In this document: piece by piece, positions 15,161 through 63,167 of the stretch
Position numbering within the stretch: position 1 is the stretch's first letter
Layout: each line of letters starts with the position of its first letter
Source: Macrostomum lignano
Lineage: Eukaryota
Assembly (NCBI GenBank): GCA_002269645.1
Contig: NIVC01002219.1
Span: 1-64,000 of the forward strand
Direction of reading: 5' to 3'
Length of the DNA: 64,000 nt
The notes under the pieces: model-generated
Database searches by the model: none
Seen by the model: the letters and a program-made list of their open reading frames with translations, nothing else
Told to the model about the DNA's origin: nothing
Made by a program: the position numbers and the translations under genes

Positions 15161-15761
15161 TCACGGACAGGTGCCAGCGGAGTATGATGTGCCAGCTGAG
15201 CACGGCATCTGAACGTAGGCTCCATGATTGCAGCGCAGGTAGTGCACATCGCTGCTGCAGTCTCTCATGAAGTCGATGGTGCAGGCCTGGCCATCTGTGA
15301 AGCAGACGGAGCTACTGGTGGTGCTCATGTCAGCACCAGAGTTCGGAGGTGAAGTCGTGTTGACCAGTCTTCCTTCCACCACCTGAGTGGGTGCAACAAT
15401 CAACGAAAAGGTTCTTAACAACAATGAAGGGCACTTATGGATAAGTTTGATTTTAGTGGTGTATTGAGCACCGACAGACCTCACTGACGCAGTCCAGGGG
15501 TCTCCACAGCGCCTCATACTGAGCGGCAGTGGCCAGATAGCAAGTGCCGTCTCGCTTGAACACGGCGGTGCAGTTGGGTCGCACTGCGCACTCCACCGAG
15601 CAGGCGCGAGGGTCTCGGACTCCGCTGACCTGCGACAGGTCGGTCACGTTTCCTGGGCAACCGGAGACGACGCGGAAGCGGACGCAGACACCGGATGCGA
15701 TGGACAACAGGCTGAGCAGGCAGGAGGCCACAGCCAGCATTCTGTGAGCTGACAGATGCAT
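15161..15761 (-). CDS. PAN-family gene 1: signal peptide + PAN/Apple-like domain + short S/T linker + CBM14-like domain; exons 15761-15480 and 15382-15161 (167 aa)
   Basis: C-x3-C-x5-C PAN core (ACSVECAVRPNCTAVF..GTCYL); phase-0 GT-AG intron; exon 2 ends CTIDFMRDCSSDVHYLRCNHGAYVQMPCSAGTSYSAGTCP*. Confidence 0.8.
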
Positions 15762-16130
15762 GGGTCTCGGTGGTAGCTGTCTTTCGAGCGATGTCCTCAG
15801 ATGAATTGTACTTATAAAAAGCTGCACGTACGTATTAAACAGAGAGATTTTTTGAGAATGAGCGAATGGGAGCCGACTTGAATAGCGAGCGTGTTTAGTG
15901 GCTGCTTCTTCTTTCCTGAGATGGGTCTTGACTACAGAAGCGCTTAATGCACGGGTCTTAGGCCTTCATTTCCTGTAGAAATTGTCACCGCCACGGAAAT
16001 TGAAAGCACCCTGTTGTGACTCAGACATGCGGAAATTTTCAGTTGGCAAATGAGGCTGTGAATGCTTTGTAGGGAGCCAGAAGCATTACAGCCCTCTGCT
16101 TTATTGCTATGCAATTCTCACTATAGATCT

Positions 16131-16239
16131 GCTCTCTCTCTCTCTCTCTCTCTCTCTCTCTCTCTCTCTCTCTCTCTCTCTCTCTCTCTCTCTCTCTCTC
16201 TCTCTCTCTCTCTCTCTCTCTCTCTCTCTCTCTCTCTCT
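16131..16239. repeat. (CT)n microsatellite
   Basis: Directly visible in the sequence. Confidence 0.98.
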
Positions 16240-59852: not shown

Positions 59853-61187
59853 ATGCACCTGCCACATCACAGAATGCTGTCTGTGGCCTCTTGCCTGCTC
59901 AGCCTGCTGTCCGTCGCGTCCGGAGTCTGCGTCCGCTTCCGCGTCGTCTCGGGTTGCACCGGAAACGTGACCGACCTGTTTCGGGTTAACGGAGTTCGAG
60001 ACCCTCGCACCTGCTCGGTGGAGTGCGCAGTGCGACCCAACTGCACCGCCGTGTTCAAGCGAGACGGCACTTGCTATCTGGCCACCGCCGCTCAGTATGA
60101 GGCGCTGTGGAGACCACTGGACTGCGTTAGCGAGGTCAGTCGGTCTTTCTTGCTTTGTGATTAAAAATTGTTTTTGGGTAATTTGAGGCAAATGCGGCAA
60201 CATAACAATGAAAACTGCAGACTGAACGAAAGCAAAAGTTATTGGATTGAAAGTTCCTAGAATAACTTATATAAAGCAATGTCTATAAAACAAAGATAAA
60301 ACTCGATACGCTTCAAGCTAATGCCGCTCTTTTTTTAGGTCGTTGAGGGTCGGCTTCTATCCACCACTACTGAGGGAAAAAGTGCTGAGACTGACTCTGT
60401 CTCCACCACTGCTCCAGCCTCAACCACTGCCACTGCTCCAGCCTCAACCACTGCCACTGCTCCAGCCTCAACCACTGCCACTGCTCCAGCCTCAACCACT
60501 GCCACTGCTCCAGCCTCAACCACTGCCACTGCTCCAGCCTCAACCACTGCCACTGCTCCAGCCTCAACCACTGCCACTGCTCCAGCCTCAACCACTGCCA
60601 CTGCTCCAGCCTCAACCGCCGCCACTGCTCCAGCCTCAACCGCCGCCACTGCTCCAGCCTCAACCACTGCCACTGCTCCAGCCTCAACCACTGCCACTGC
60701 TCCAGCCTCAACCGCCGCCACTGCTCCAGCCTCAACCACTGCCACTGCTCCAGCCTCAACCACTGCCACTGCTCCAGCCTCAACCACTGCTTCAGCCTTA
60801 ACCACTGCCACTGCTCCAGCCTCAACCACTGCGCCAGCCTCAACCACTGCTCCAGCCTTAATCACCGCCACTGCTTCAGCCCCAACAACTGCTCCAGTCT
60901 CAACCACTGCTCCAGTCTCAACCACTGCTCCAGCCTCAAGCACTGCTCCAGCCTCAACCACTGCTCCAGCCTCAACCACTGCTCCAGCCTCAACCACTGC
61001 TCCAGTCTCAACCACTGCTTCAGCAAGCAGCACTGCGTGCGCATCAGCAGATCAATACTGCGGGATCGAAGGCGAATACCAGCAGCATTGCAGCAGTGAT
61101 GTTCATTATATGCAATGCTCCAACTATAAGTACATTCAGAGACAGTGCTCTCCCGGAACAAGCTGGTCCGCTGGCACATGCCCTTGA
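59853..61187 (+). CDS. PAN-family gene 12 (paralog of gene 6): PAN + mucin + CBM14-like domain; exons 59853-60134 and 60339-61187 (376 aa)
   Basis: Open frame; ends CSSDVHYMQCSNYKYIQRQCSPGTSWSAGTCP*. Confidence 0.85.
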
Positions 61188-62939
61188 CTTTCGTCGCAGA
61201 CAATAAGGTTCCATGTTCGGTTGATTAGACTTTTGTTATTCCTTTTCCGTTGGGTCAGTTGCATTGGGAGAATTTAATATACAGTCACCGTCGAATCAAT
61301 TTCATGACTGGATAGATTGTTTGAAACGGTCAGAAATATTAAATATATGCTCGACGTAGTAGCCTTTGATACAATTGTATCAAGTTGCTGGTAAGTGAGA
61401 ACTTCTGCATTTCGCTGAACCTTGAGCCGCTGTATAACGTCGTTATCTGTCGGCATTTGTAAAAATACCCATTTGCCAGCGACGAGCCGGCGGACGTCAA
61501 TTACGTCAAAATGTTGCTCGAAGGAGTGAAAAGGGAAAAATTACCGACCAACCTGACACAGCTTTTATGCAGAACAGAATTCCTTGGGAATTTTTGTTGG
61601 AAAATTAAAAACCTCTTTTGGAGGCCAACAAAATATTTTCGCGTGAACTGGGAAATTCATTGATGCAGGAAGCTTTCAGTGAAAAAGTGGTAAAAATGTT
61701 TCAACTCTTAGCACGGCAGCAGCTTTGCTTCACTAGATGATGCGTTGCTGTTGTAGTTCCCGATTGCCAAATTTCAGCTAAGGCTTCAGGCGTTCTGATT
61801 TTTCAGCCTATTGTTTCAGTTGACTGCAGTTTGAAGGATTTCAGTGGGAGTTTTCAGCAGCATCCACGCAAACTGTCAAGTTGAATGTTTTTCTACAATA
61901 GCATAGAACAATACAATAAATCAATCGGATGTCAATATGGTGACAACCCAATCGTGACAAGCAGCGATAATGCTACTTCTGCACACTTGTGTGTGTGTCT
62001 GTCCATATGACTAGGTACAATTCCACGCGCTTGTCTGCCTGCGCAGGGGAGTCGGCGGAATGGGAAAATGCAAGCACCCTGCTTCTAATAAAAAGCGGCC
62101 GTCGATCAGGGAGATTTTTTCTTTGGCAAAGCGATTTACTTCATAGAGCACTTCATAGCTTGTTTGATTACTACCAAGAAGATATATAGTTCGTCTTTTC
62201 TGCATTGGTAAACATTTCTGCAGAGCGTCGCTTTTGTGAAATGAAATCACACTACTGCCATAAGCATGCAGACTTTGCAGCGCTTATCTCGAACCTGACA
62301 CGCAGCCGATTCAAGAAATTTTATTCTTTTCTTTGTTGCCTCCCAAGCAGATTGCTAGTTTAAAACTAAAAACTGAAAACTTTCTATCTTACTAATGCAA
62401 GGTCGGCCAACTCCGGGCTGCAAAGCTTCTCTATATCCGGCCCTCGGCTCTTTGAAATTTCACAATAGCAATCCGGCCCGGTTCTCTGTCTTCTTTTCTT
62501 TGTTTTCCTATTTCCTCTTCTGCTTCTTCTGTTTCTGTTGTCGGGGATCCACAGTGAGAAATATGAGCTAAATGCTATTCACCATGCTGTTTGAAGATGT
62601 CCCAGGCTACATCGAGAGTTTTACTTGGATCTTAGTGACATAACGGGGCGATATTTGGTTGAAAGTACATGCACGGATCTAAGGACGCTCTAGCTGGGAC
62701 CAATTTGACCCTATCTGATATCAGATGCATGTACTTTTGAAGCTGACTTGTGTATGCATTTCTGAAATGAAATCTACAGAGCACGACTCTCCGAAACTGA
62801 AATCTCCGGAACTGGAAGCATAAAGCCAAAAATCATACATCCATGCTACCACGGAGGCACGGCTTTCAGAGCACGGAAGATAAACATGGCTTGTTCGAAT
62901 TAAACTCACTTATTAGATGATGCTCGAGTAGTGGCTGTT

Positions 62940-63167
62940 TCAGACGTTTTTGTTATCCACAAAGTACTCATACTGAGCGGCCGTGGCCAGATAGCAAGTG
63001 CCGTCTCGCTTGAACACGGCGGTGCAGTTGGGTCGCACTGCGCACTCCACCGAGCAGGCGCGAGGGTCTCGAACCCCGTTGACCTGCGACAGGCCGGTCA
63101 CGTTTCCGGGGCAACCGGAGCCGACGCAGAGTCGGTAGGAGACGCTGGCCTGCGACGATGGCTTCAT
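62940..63167 (-). pseudogene. PAN-family copy 13 (duplicate of copy 7)
   Basis: Translation identical to that of 39644-39871. Confidence 0.7.

What the first reader, a model, noticed from the sequence alone, without database searches (positions are those of the whole stretch)
15161..63167. Rapidly evolving modular family of secreted PAN-mucin proteins: 13 copies in 48 kb
One phase-0 exon (signal peptide + PAN/Apple-like domain with NVT/NCT sequons) is reused in both orientations. It is spliced to second exons with different Thr/Ala/Pro linkers (none, TTST, PASTTA, PASTTATA, TATDTA) and two alternative C-termini. Intact genes, pseudogenes and fragments are interleaved, a birth-and-death pattern typical of immune, mucus or adhesion loci. 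I do not recognise this as a described family. It is the best candidate for an undescribed system here; the function is inference.
Basis: partly seen in the sequence, partly recalled or inferred. Interest (0 to 1): 0.8.

Follow-up and report, generated by a model that had tools for sequence, protein, structure and literature searches.

The report
Flatworm PAN–mucin–chitin-binding gene cluster
A 48-kb stretch of the flatworm Macrostomum lignano genome holds 13 copies of one exon (signal peptide plus PAN/Apple domain) that stay nearly identical, joined to very different second exons (mucin repeats, a chitin-binding-type domain, or other tails); this is a real, lineage-specific family of secreted proteins built from known parts, and its function is untested.

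Summary
tblastn finds 13 copies of the exon between 15.2 and 63.2 kb, on both strands. Six are intact two-exon genes with conserved phase-0 GAG|GT...AG|GT splice sites. One is doubtful and six are broken. Three copies come from a recent ~7-kb segmental duplication.

The window is Macrostomum lignano. Spliced gene 1 is 100% identical to UniRef A0A1I8GNT4 ("Apple domain-containing protein"), so the short members are already predicted proteins. The mucin-bearing members have no database counterpart.

Exon 1 is a PAN/Apple domain by Cys motif, profile hits and a model whose top 11 PDB matches all contain PAN/apple domains, although Pfam scores stay below threshold.

"Rapidly evolving" is only half right. 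The PAN exon is conserved (dN/dS 0.11-0.67, dS about 0.15). In the same gene pair the C-terminal domain is saturated (pS 0.76), and similarity stops within about 5 bp of the splice donor. That points to concerted evolution confined to exon 1, while exon 2 diversifies by repeat expansion.

The likely function is a secreted, O-glycosylated lectin-mucin of an extracellular matrix; this is inferred. I rate it a new variant of known kinds, of moderate interest.

The parts
15161..15761 (-). Gene 1 (intact, 167 aa): exon 1 at 15480-15761 (signal peptide + PAN), 97-nt intron, exon 2 at 15161-15382 (short Ser/Thr linker + Cys-rich CBM14/19-like domain, no repeat array).
   Evidence: From Met8 the spliced product is 100% identical to UniRef A0A1I8GNT4 (P0004). 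Pfam CBM_19 scores 22.4 bits against a cut-off of 20.1.
19869..20585 (-). Gene 2 (intact, about 154 aa from the ATG at 20585): exon 1 at 20319-20585, 252-nt intron, exon 2 at 19869-20066 (a T-rich non-repetitive stretch and its own acidic tail ending EKVINAIKEREND).
24106..24818 (-). Copy 3 (defective). A deletion removed the last ~39 nt of exon 1 (including the last PAN Cys) and most of the intron, leaving ...AAQ fused to the intron tail ttttttaag and exon 2 (VVFDS...). The 15-nt TDTTL array (24106-24397) is out of frame.
27004..29230 (+). Gene 4 (doubtful). It has an intact but divergent exon 1 at 27004-27321 (45% aa identity to the others, donor CAG|GTGAAG). The TTAPAS array at 28451-29230 carries a recurrent TGA in the TTAPAS frame after 45 codons, and no C-terminal domain follows.
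30619..31594 (+). Gene 5 (intact, 287 aa): exon 1 at 30619-30885, 112-nt intron, exon 2 at 30998-31594 (TTAPAS mucin array + 85-aa Cys-free tail ending GILEKVGDFLLG).
   Evidence: The tail has no homologue among 5.8 billion proteins.
32736..35270 (-). LTR retrotransposon remnant (RNase H + integrase ORF at 33009-34895) with two 100% identical 265-bp LTRs and a duplicated target sequence. It lies between genes 5 and 6 and is absent from the paralogous site at about 58,940.
36200..37822 (+). Gene 6 (intact, 472 aa): exon 1 at 36200-36481, 204-nt intron, exon 2 at 36686-37822 (TTATAPAS/TTAPAS mucin of about 320 aa + CBM14/19-like domain at 37664-37819).
39671..39862 (-). Copy 7: an exon-1 fragment with no signal peptide, truncated after ...AAQYE, followed by a stop.
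40686..40754 (+). Copy 8: a signal-peptide-only fragment (MLGLAYCLLSLLSVASGVCVRFR...).
40945..45090 (-). Pseudogene 9: exon 1 at 44856-45090 with a 1-nt frameshift, 90-nt intron, exon 2 from 44765 with a 3.5-kb TATDTA array (41125-44666, 18 nt x 195) containing stops, and a degraded CBM-like end at 40945-41064 containing a stop.
46412..46516 (+). Copy 10: a fragment of the 3' half of exon 1 with an in-frame stop.
56683..57814 (+). Gene 11 (intact, 339 aa; an alternative ATG lies at 56659): exon 1 to 56961, 112-nt intron, exon 2 at 57074-57814 (TTAPAS mucin + GILEKVGDLLLG tail). It is the duplicate of gene 5.
59853..61187 (+). Gene 12 (intact, 376 aa): exon 1 at 59853-60134, 204-nt intron, exon 2 at 60339-61187 (TTATAPAS/TTAPAS mucin + CBM14/19-like domain at 61029-61184). 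It is the duplicate of gene 6, with 96 fewer exon-2 codons.
62967..63158 (-). Copy 13: an exon-1 fragment, the duplicate of copy 7.

Best explanation
What it is (shown). This is a Macrostomum-specific tandem cluster of small secreted-protein genes. Each has two exons. Exon 1 encodes a signal peptide and one PAN/Apple domain. Exon 2 encodes a variable Pro/Thr/Ser/Ala repeat, absent in gene 1 and about 320 residues long in gene 6. It ends in a single truncated CBM14/CBM19-type chitin-binding module, or in a Cys-free tail.

How it evolves (shown as a pattern; the mechanism is inferred). Exon 1 is kept nearly identical among paralogues by concerted evolution, meaning gene conversion confined to the exon, together with purifying selection. 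Exon 2, the introns and the promoters are old and diverge freely. New mucins arise when 15-, 18- or 24-nt units expand between the two binding domains. Whole units are duplicated, inverted, truncated and hit by transposons.

How it works (inferred). After signal-peptide cleavage (predicted after ...ASG) the proteins are secreted and the repeats are heavily O-glycosylated. The PAN domain binds a glycan or protein ligand. The CBM-like domain binds a chitin or GlcNAc-rich polymer. The mucin spacer sets reach and hydration. An extra, non-conserved Cys at mature position 2 makes the Cys count odd and could form disulfide-linked dimers. Together these would be bivalent lectin-mucins that coat or cross-link an extracellular matrix or mucus layer, as peritrophins do. 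The tissue is unknown.
For: Identity:
- Spliced gene 1 equals UniRef A0A1I8GNT4 of M. lignano.
- Only 10 of 1.84 billion representative proteins score E<1e-3 against the family profile. Only the two M. lignano clusters match it over its full length.

PAN domain:
- The Cys register C-x18-C-x3-C-x5-C-x9-C-x16-C is invariant across the aligned sequences.
- Pfam PAN_1, PAN_3 and KIAA0319_N score E 0.008-0.03.
- The family profile hits a true multi-PAN protein, P0016, at E 4.9e-4.
- The best AlphaFold model of the domain has pLDDT 91.9. Its top 11 Foldseek PDB matches are all structures that contain PAN/apple domains (6ryx, 1hky, 2yio SML-2, 4a5v MIC4), with TM about 0.5.

CBM domain:
- Pfam CBM_19 scores 22.4 bits against a cut-off of 20.1.
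- The profile hits mollusc 8x and 4x CBM_14 proteins at E 8.6e-22 and 4.6e-5.
- The shared register is ...DC..(H/K)Y(L).C.NG.YV...C..G(T/L).(Y/W/F)S...C.

Gene models:
- Six models are open from ATG to stop.
- Splice sites are conserved and phase 0.
- The duplicates 6 and 12 differ by 96 codons yet keep the frame, and their CBM-like domain has 1 amino-acid change in 52, with dN/dS about 0.1.

Mucin character: exon 2 is 63-85% T+S+P+A in the four repeat-bearing genes.

Exon-limited homogenisation:
- For gene 1 versus gene 6, the PAN exon has dS 0.156 and dN 0.044. The CBM part of exon 2 has pS 0.76 (saturated) and dN 0.40.
- Mean identity among five independent copies is 0.78-0.96 from -234 to +5 of the exon end and about 0.3 outside.
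- At sites -125 and -117, neighbours 5 and 6 share one allele pair and neighbours 11 and 12 share the other, against the orthology shown by their flanks.
- Gene 4 (45% identical) and the UniRef paralogue P0002 (58% identical) show how far the exon diverges when it is not homogenised.

Glycan context: the same PAN subtype is fused to ConA-like/legume-lectin-like domains in other M. lignano proteins (P0011, P0015).
Against: - No transcript, protein or tissue evidence could be reached. Database look-ups by exact protein found nothing. No family peptides appear in the (truncated) adhesive-secretion proteomics tables. The mucin-bearing models exist only as my predictions.
- Pfam PAN models stay below their cut-offs, and Foldseek E-values are 0.2-1. 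Only 1 of 5 AlphaFold models was confident.
- The CBM-like domain lacks the sixth canonical Cys and has an extra N-terminal one, and CBM_14 itself scores below its cut-off. Chitin binding is therefore not assured.
- I found no paper in the held library on chitin synthase in Macrostomum.
- The gene-conversion signature rests on few sites. Strong selection that includes synonymous sites cannot be formally excluded.
- The tandem duplicate could be an assembly artefact.
Confidence: 0.6

Rival explanations
1. The architecture is the same but the role differs: these are reproductive secretions, such as prostate or seminal fluid, cement or shell gland, or egg coat. Copy-number and repeat turnover would then be driven by sexual selection or conflict rather than by a barrier or matrix role.
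For: The locus shows birth-and-death turnover and is restricted to one lineage. The best CBM14 relative is annotated after C. elegans CPG-2, an eggshell chitin-binding proteoglycan. Many M. lignano prostate-limited transcripts had no identifiable homologues or conserved domains (Weber 2018, PMC5977470).
Against: No "Apple", "PAN", "chitin" or "mucin" annotation appears in the supplementary tables of Weber 2018. The PAN domain is under purifying selection, not positive selection. No expression data were reachable.
Confidence: 0.17
2. The proteins are recognition or defence lectins. PAN and the CBM-like domain would bind foreign glycans (fungal or diatom chitin, microbial surfaces), and the diversified exon 2 set would give a repertoire, by analogy with the polymorphic mucins of Schistosoma mansoni.
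For: Each CBM-bearing protein has two carbohydrate-binding-type modules. The family is clustered, its members appear to recombine, and pseudogenes could act as donors. SmPoMuc is a precedent for a recombining, clustered mucin family in a flatworm (PMC2576457).
Against: The putative recognition domain (PAN) is the homogenised and least variable part. The variable part is a low-complexity glycosylated spacer, not a binding surface. Nothing suggests individual-specific expression.
Confidence: 0.15
3. Exon 1 is uniform simply because selection is strong, including selection on synonymous sites or for codon use, on old duplicates. Alternatively, it was recently copied as a cassette onto older second exons (exon shuffling). 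Neither needs ongoing gene conversion.
For: dN/dS is below 1. The block of similarity ends at the splice donor, as expected if only coding and splice-signal sequence is constrained.
Against: dS in exon 1 is about 0.15, while synonymous sites of exon 2 in the same gene pair are saturated. Ordinary purifying selection does not hold synonymous sites that well. Shared variants grouped by physical neighbourhood rather than by orthology fit gene conversion.
Confidence: 0.2
4. Part of the copy number is an assembly artefact. The 56.7-63.6 kb block would be a haplotype or homeologue of 30.6-40.3 kb placed in tandem by mistake, and the locus would be largely decaying repeats of little function.
For: The two blocks are 91-98% identical over about 7 kb. 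The region is dense in satellites and transposons. Six of the 13 copies are defective.
Against: About 10 copies remain without the duplicate. Six models are intact with conserved splice sites, and dN/dS is below 1. The two blocks differ by an LTR insertion and by repeat number, as real paralogues would. UniRef holds at least 8 distinct family proteins.
Confidence: 0.1

Closest known systems
Peritrophins / invertebrate intestinal mucins and C. elegans CPG-1/CPG-2-type proteins (CBM14 chitin-binding domains combined with Ser/Thr-rich mucin regions)
   Same: They are secreted and combine a peritrophin-A-type Cys-rich module with PTS tandem repeats. The family profile's strongest outside hits are mollusc multi-CBM14 proteins, one of them named chondroitin proteoglycan-2.
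   Different: This family has a single CBM-like module that lacks the sixth canonical Cys. It carries an N-terminal PAN/Apple domain, which as far as I know is not part of peritrophins. The proteins are very small. Gut expression and chitin binding are untested.
PAN/Apple lectins and adhesins (apicomplexan SML-2, MIC4, Eimeria PAN module; HGF/plasminogen N domain; factor XI apple domains)
   Same: They share the Cys register, and the predicted fold matches: the top Foldseek hits are 1hky, 2yio and 4a5v.
   Different: Sequence similarity is below Pfam cut-offs. Here there is one domain per protein, followed by a mucin and a CBM-like module. The ligand is unknown.
Oomycete CBEL-type proteins (CBM1 cellulose-binding modules paired with PAN/Apple domains; PMC3532174, listed)
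   Same: They follow the same design principle: a PAN/Apple domain paired with a small Cys-rich carbohydrate-binding module in a secreted protein.
   Different: The carbohydrate-binding module belongs to a different family (CBM1 rather than CBM14/19), there is no mucin array, and the lineage is unrelated. This is an analogy, not homology.
C. elegans LET-653 (PAN domains + mucin-like region + ZP domain; PMC4970718, listed)
   Same: It has PAN/Apple domains followed by a mucin-like linker in a secreted apical-matrix glycoprotein.
   Different: No ZP domain is present in any gene model here.
Mucinisation of non-mucin precursors by exonic repeat gain (Pajic et al. 2022, PMC9417175)
   Same: The same scaffold occurs without repeats (gene 1) and with 18- or 24-nt exonic PTS arrays of different length (genes 6 and 12). 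The duplicates differ by 96 exon-2 codons. This is the process that paper proposes.
   Different: That paper describes mammalian salivary and SCPP-locus genes. Here the process is seen within one flatworm cluster, between two binding domains.
Schistosoma mansoni polymorphic mucins, SmPoMuc (PMC2576457)
   Same: It is a flatworm multigene mucin family whose members lie in clusters and recombine frequently, with variable tandem repeats next to a conserved part.
   Different: There is no sequence relationship, and SmPoMucs are not described with PAN or CBM domains. Individual-specific expression and a role in host compatibility are established for SmPoMuc and untested here.

Membership tests
PAN/Apple domain superfamily | Conserved Cys core (C-x3-C-x5-C ... 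C, with outer Cys pair) in a domain of about 70 aa | tested here: met
   C12, C31, C35, C41 and C51 are invariant and C68 nearly invariant across window copies, UniRef paralogues and PAN+lectin proteins of M. lignano.
PAN/Apple domain superfamily | Curated profile match above threshold | tested here: not met
   Pfam PAN_1 scores 14.7 bits (cut-off 21.4), PAN_3 14.7 (21.1) and KIAA0319_N 16.3 (27). UniProt nonetheless names the proteins "Apple domain-containing". The family profile reaches a true PAN protein at E 4.9e-4.
PAN/Apple domain superfamily | PAN fold (helix packed on a curved beta-sheet) | tested here: inconclusive
   The best AlphaFold model has pLDDT 91.9, but the other four models score 47-59. 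The top 11 Foldseek PDB hits all contain PAN/apple domains, with TM about 0.5 and probability up to 0.82, but E is 0.2-1.1.
CBM14 / CBM19 chitin-binding modules (peritrophin-A type) | Curated profile match above threshold | tested here: met
   CBM_19 scores 22.4 bits (cut-off 20.1) for gene 1's domain and 20.4 for P0005. CBM_14 scores 17.8, below its 22.1 cut-off. The family profile hits 8x CBM_14 protein P0009 at E 8.6e-22.
CBM14 / CBM19 chitin-binding modules (peritrophin-A type) | Six-Cys register with conserved aromatic residues | tested here: inconclusive
   C1-C5 and the aromatic positions (HY before C3, Y/W after G-T-S) align. The canonical C6 is absent because the protein ends at ...GTCP, and an extra Cys lies 6-7 residues upstream of C1.
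CBM14 / CBM19 chitin-binding modules (peritrophin-A type) | Binds chitin or chito-oligosaccharides | not testable with these tools
   This needs a recombinant-domain binding assay.
Mucins (functional class) | Secreted protein with tandem Pro/Thr/Ser-rich exonic repeats | tested here: met
   There is an N-terminal hydrophobic leader. 18- and 24-nt arrays of 12-40 units encode TTAPAS or TTATAPAS, and exon 2 is 63-85% T+S+P+A.
Mucins (functional class) | Dense O-glycosylation of the repeats | not testable with these tools
   This needs glycoproteomics or lectin blots.
Peritrophins / intestinal mucins | Expressed by gut epithelium and bound to a chitinous peritrophic matrix | not testable with these tools
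   No expression data could be reached. I found no paper in the held library on chitin synthase in Macrostomum.
LET-653-type PAN-mucin-ZP proteins | C-terminal ZP domain | tested here: not met
   No ZP match was found in any exon-2 product, and the gene models end at the CBM-like domain or the short tail.
SmPoMuc-like polymorphic mucins | Sequence homology to SmPoMuc, and individual-specific expression | not tested
   This is only a conceptual parallel.

The most novel reading that the evidence does not exclude
The cluster is a cassette-type diversification locus of a free-living flatworm. A recognition exon (PAN) is actively homogenised by gene conversion. It is combined with a changing set of mucin and anchor exons, and pseudogene copies serve as donors. 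The result would be a repertoire of glyco-surfaces used in partner, self or microbe recognition, a free-living counterpart of the schistosome polymorphic mucins.
Probability: 0.12. Interest if true: 0.7.

Novelty: new variant of a known kind. Interest (0 to 1): 0.42.

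Why it matters
All three building blocks (PAN/Apple, PTS mucin repeats, CBM14/19) are well known. The short members are already predicted proteins in UniProt. This is therefore not a new kind of system.

Two things are worth a specialist's attention.

1. One locus shows, side by side, a repeat-free PAN-CBM gene and paralogues in which 18- or 24-nt arrays have expanded between the two domains. This is a compact natural series for how mucins arise.

2. The two exons of the same genes have very different histories. 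Exon 1 has dS of about 0.15, while exon 2 is saturated, and similarity ends at the splice donor. That makes the locus a clean case for studying exon-limited concerted evolution.

If the C-terminal domain really binds chitin, it would also raise the question of what chitin-like material a macrostomid flatworm makes or encounters.

Tried and rejected
- Exact-protein look-ups for genomic context (P0001, P0002, and gene 1 = P0004) found nothing on record. No paralogous loci could be fetched, so a genome-wide copy count was not possible.
- An HMM search of PDB sequences with the family profile gave only chance hits to NDUFB10, at E about 0.4.
- The full-length AlphaFold model was poor (pLDDT 56.7), and its Foldseek search was uninformative (best hit the PAN lectin SML-2, at E 0.5). 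Only the PAN domain alone gave a usable model.
- A homologue search with the Cys-free tail exon found nothing.
- Literature searches: there were no papers on Macrostomum with "Apple domain", and the only paper with "PAN domain" is unrelated. There was nothing on Macrostomum and chitin synthase. No "Apple", "PAN" or "chitin" annotation relating to this family appears in the supplements of the seminal-fluid screen, the positional RNA-seq paper or the bioadhesion paper. Tryptic peptides of the family were absent from the truncated adhesive proteomics tables.
- I considered the ORF at 53487-53858 as a 14th, divergent PAN copy. It has a C-x3-C-x5-C-x9-C motif, but hhalign gives probability 1.4% and Pfam finds nothing, so I did not count it.
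- I considered that the repeated exon might be part of a transposon. I rejected this because the block is only about 250 bp, its 3' end coincides with the exon end, it is under purifying selection, and it is part of an annotated spliced protein.

Full report
**1.

The window has 36-54% G+C and carries transposons, satellites and spliced genes, so it is eukaryotic. A tblastn search with the 95-aa exon-1 peptide finds 13 copies between 15,477 and 63,158 and none elsewhere. E-values run from 4e-62 to 1.6e-7. Six copies are on the - strand and seven on the + strand.

I numbered the copies g1 to g13 in window order: 15761-15477(-), 20597-20316(-), 24818-24534(-), 27004-27324(+), 30619-30888(+), 36200-36484(+), 39862-39671(-), 40686-40754(+), 45090-44853(-), 46412-46516(+), 56659-56964(+), 59853-60137(+) and 63158-62967(-).

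**2. Gene structure**

In every intact copy the exon ends ...(C)xSE with GAG|GT(C/A)(A/T). Gene g4 uses CAG|GTGAAG. After 97-252 nt, a pyrimidine tract and AG are followed by GT(C/G)(G/A)T..., encoding VVEGR, VVDDR or VIIDR. All junctions are phase 0.

Splicing gives six models that are open from ATG to stop.

| Gene | Length | Architecture |
|---|---|---|
| g1 | 167 aa | PAN, short S/T linker, Cys-rich domain |
| g2 | about 154 aa | PAN, T-rich stretch, own tail |
| g5 | 287 aa | PAN, TTAPAS array, 85-aa Cys-free tail |
| g11 | 339 aa | PAN, TTAPAS array, 85-aa Cys-free tail |
| g6 | 472 aa | PAN, TTATAPAS/TTAPAS array, Cys-rich domain |
| g12 | 376 aa | PAN, TTATAPAS/TTAPAS array, Cys-rich domain |

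The repeat units are 18 and 24 nt. Exon 2 is 63-85% T+S+P+A in g5, g6, g11 and g12. The NVT-type and NCT sequons are conserved.

The other seven copies are doubtful or broken.

- g4 has an intact but divergent exon 1 (45% identity). Its array carries a recurrent TGA in the TTAPAS frame after 45 codons.
- g3 lost the end of exon 1 and most of the intron by deletion.
- g9 has a frameshift in exon 1, a 3.5-kb TATDTA array (18 nt x 195) with stops, and a degraded C-terminal domain.
- g7, g8, g10 and g13 are fragments.

There are therefore at least three C-termini, not two.

**3. Source and database status**

The only full-length relatives among 5.8 billion proteins are two clusters of Macrostomum lignano proteins. 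They are named "Apple domain-containing protein", and one is named "CBM_19 domain-containing protein". UniRef A0A1I8GNT4 (P0004) is identical, residue for residue, to spliced g1 from Met8. This identifies the organism and independently confirms the splice junction.

All eight database members are of the repeat-free PAN + Cys-rich type. None of the eight database proteins carries a repeat array, and the tail-type exon 2 has no homologue at all. I conclude that g5, g6, g11 and g12 are unannotated.

An exhaustive HMMER search of 1.84 billion representative proteins with a family profile gave only 10 hits at E<1e-3. Only the two M. lignano clusters matched across the whole profile.

**4. The domains**

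*PAN.* Pfam gives only sub-threshold matches: PAN_1 and PAN_3 at E 0.028, and KIAA0319_N at E 0.008. Other evidence is stronger.

- The Cys register is invariant in an alignment that includes more distant M. lignano proteins.
- The family profile reaches a true multi-PAN protein, P0016. Pfam scores P0016 at PAN_1 1e-14, and the family profile scores it at E 4.9e-4.
- An AlphaFold model of the 71-aa domain reached pLDDT 91.9, though in only one of five models.
- Its top eleven Foldseek matches in the PDB are all structures that contain PAN/apple domains. They are the fungal copper oxidase 6ryx/6ryw/6ryv/6stx, the Eimeria PAN module 1hky, the galactose-binding lectin SML-2 (2yio/2yil/2yip) and TgMIC4 apple domains (4a5v). 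TM is about 0.5 but E is only 0.2-1.1.

I accept PAN as the fold with fair confidence.

- It matches Pfam CBM_19 above the curated cut-off (22.4 against 20.1 bits) and CBM_14 below it.
- The family profile hits mollusc proteins made of 8 and 4 CBM_14 repeats at E 8.6e-22 and 4.6e-5. One is named chondroitin proteoglycan-2.
- The alignment shares C1-C5 and the aromatic positions. The sixth Cys is missing, and an extra Cys lies upstream.

It is therefore a truncated peritrophin-A-type module, and its chitin binding is untested.

*Context.* The same PAN subtype is fused to ConA-like or legume-lectin-like domains in other M. lignano proteins (P0011, P0015). The module keeps company with carbohydrate-binding partners.

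**5. How the locus evolves**

A block of about 7 kb holding g5, g6 and g7 (30.6-40.3 kb) is duplicated at 56.7-63.6 kb as g11, g12 and g13, with 91-98% identity. The first copy has since acquired an LTR element at 32736-35270. Its 265-bp LTRs are 100% identical, it is flanked by a duplicated target sequence, and the site is empty in the second copy.

Beyond that duplicate, the only sequence shared by the genes is exon 1. Among five independent copies, mean pairwise identity is 0.78-0.96 from -234 to +5 relative to the last exon base. It is about 0.3, the level of noise, in the 5' region and the intron.

Within the PAN exon, dN/dS is 0.11-0.67 and dS is only 0.06-0.23. In the same gene pair (g1 against g6 or g12) the C-terminal domain has saturated synonymous sites (pS 0.76-0.77) and dN 0.40. 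Two exons of the same genes thus differ enormously in apparent age.

Ordinary purifying selection does not hold synonymous sites that well. The simplest reading is concerted evolution, meaning gene conversion confined to the only segment that is still homologous.

A small signature fits this. At sites -125 and -117, neighbours g5 and g6 share one allele pair and neighbours g11 and g12 share the other, against the orthology shown by their flanks. g4 (45% identical) and the UniRef paralogue P0002 (58% identical) show how far the exon diverges when it escapes homogenisation.

"Rapidly evolving" therefore applies to exon 2, repeat number and copy number, but not to the PAN domain. g6 and g12 differ by 96 codons while keeping the frame and a nearly identical C-terminal domain (dN/dS about 0.1).

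**6. Most likely mechanism (inferred)**

The N-terminus has a hydrophobic leader ending ...LLSIASG, so the proteins should be secreted. The PTS arrays should be densely O-glycosylated. A PAN domain at one end and a CBM-type domain at the other, separated by a spacer of 0 to about 320 residues, suggest bivalent lectin-mucins. These would tether a hydrated glycan brush to, or cross-link, a glycan or chitin-like extracellular matrix, much as peritrophins and intestinal mucins do.

In most window copies the mature protein has a non-conserved Cys at position 2 (GVCVRF). It is absent in P0002, P0003 and g4. It makes the Cys count odd and could form disulfide-linked dimers. The tail-type members (g5, g11) lack the anchor and may be soluble or anchored in another way.

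Each gene has its own upstream region with a TATA-like box, and most have a poly(A) signal 150-270 nt after the stop. This fits independent transcription units.

No expression or tissue evidence could be obtained. The choice among gut, epidermal, reproductive or defence roles stays open.

**7. Comparison with known systems**

- Closest in parts are peritrophin or CPG-type proteins (CBM14 plus mucin) and PAN/apple lectins.
- Closest in design are the oomycete CBEL proteins, which pair a PAN/Apple domain with a carbohydrate-binding module (PMC3532174), and C. elegans LET-653 (PAN, mucin, ZP; PMC4970718). This family has no ZP domain.
- Closest in evolutionary process are the "mucinisation" of secreted precursors by exonic repeat gain (PMC9417175) and the recombining, clustered polymorphic mucins of Schistosoma mansoni (PMC2576457). 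The window proteins share no detectable sequence with SmPoMuc.
- No paper in the held library mentions PAN or Apple proteins of Macrostomum.

**8. Verdict**

This is a genuine, lineage-specific, clustered family of secreted PAN-(mucin)-CBM proteins. It is built from known modules, partly present in databases as uncharacterised predictions, and functionally unstudied.

The most interesting aspects are evolutionary: exon-limited homogenisation, and mucin birth caught in progress. I rate it a new variant of known kinds, with interest about 0.4. Main caveats: there is no transcript evidence, the PAN and CBM assignments rest on moderate scores, and part of the copy number could be an assembly artefact.

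Noticed in passing
window 300-10,000: A Maverick/Polinton-like element lies upstream of the cluster. It has ORFs with a B-family polymerase-like YTDTDS motif (1791-2822) and an endonuclease VII-like domain (689-1102). It also has a weak adenovirus-type protease match (3173-3457) and a double jelly-roll capsid-like ORF (7746-9032; Pfam DJR-like E 4e-5, below cut-off). The polymerase region is split over several ORFs and frames. I described it only and did not reconstruct it.
   Followed up: partly
window 10,900-13,750: LTR-retrotransposon pol remnants (RVT_1 match at 10915-11715, then RNase H- and integrase-like ORFs) are broken into several frames.
   Followed up: partly
window 32,736-35,270: A short LTR element has 100% identical 265-bp LTRs flanking an RNase H + integrase ORF. 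An 11-bp sequence (CACTACATATA) is duplicated at both ends. The paralogous site near 58,940 is empty, so the element inserted after the segmental duplication.
   Followed up: yes
window 53,300-54,900 (+): This is a separate multi-exon gene. One exon has a PAN-like C-x3-C-x5-C-x9-C motif (53487-53858), not significant by hhalign or Pfam. The following exons are Gly-rich and weakly resemble the ALK/LTK glycine-rich domain (Pfam ALK_LTK_GRD, E 0.025, below cut-off).
   Followed up: partly
window 55,314-56,012 (+): A 15-nt x 47 array is open in a TDTSP frame (ORF 55306-56046). It has no recognisable exon 1 or VVxxR start upstream. Its unit is related, in reverse orientation, to the TDTTL array at g3 (24106-24397). 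It may be an orphan mucin exon, or it may belong to the Gly-rich gene upstream.
   Followed up: partly
window 28,451-29,230 (+): In g4's array the variant unit GCCTGAACCACTGATCCA has spread. It puts TGA in the TTAPAS frame, yet the +1 frame (PLLQPQPLIQ) stays open for 228 codons. That frame shifts back into TTAPAS at a recurring CTTGAGGTCTCA junction. Either the array is decaying or the frame has been switched.
   Followed up: partly
window 21,306-23,821: A 14-bp minisatellite (GATCGTGGATCGTA x 180, 99% matches) has no stop on one strand and so produces a spurious 871-aa ORF.
   Followed up: no
window 18,477-19,153; 25,112-26,148; 29,611-30,261; 47,221-47,748: Long tetranucleotide microsatellites (AACT, AACT, TCTA, TATC; 130-260 units) sit next to several family members. 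The first two lie in a 736-bp block that is duplicated at 91% identity beside g2 and g3.
   Followed up: no
window 48,818-49,849 and 50,643-51,366: Two related 24-bp satellite arrays (about 43 and 30 units, 81-83% matches) give long spurious ORFs on both strands.
   Followed up: no
other M. lignano proteins (P0011 = PAA50913.1, P0015 = A0A1I8H603): The same PAN subtype (ECAVRPNCSAV...) is fused to ConA-like / Laminin_G_3 / legume-lectin-like domains in a second M. lignano family. The PAN module seems to have been shuffled among carbohydrate-binding partners.
   Followed up: partly
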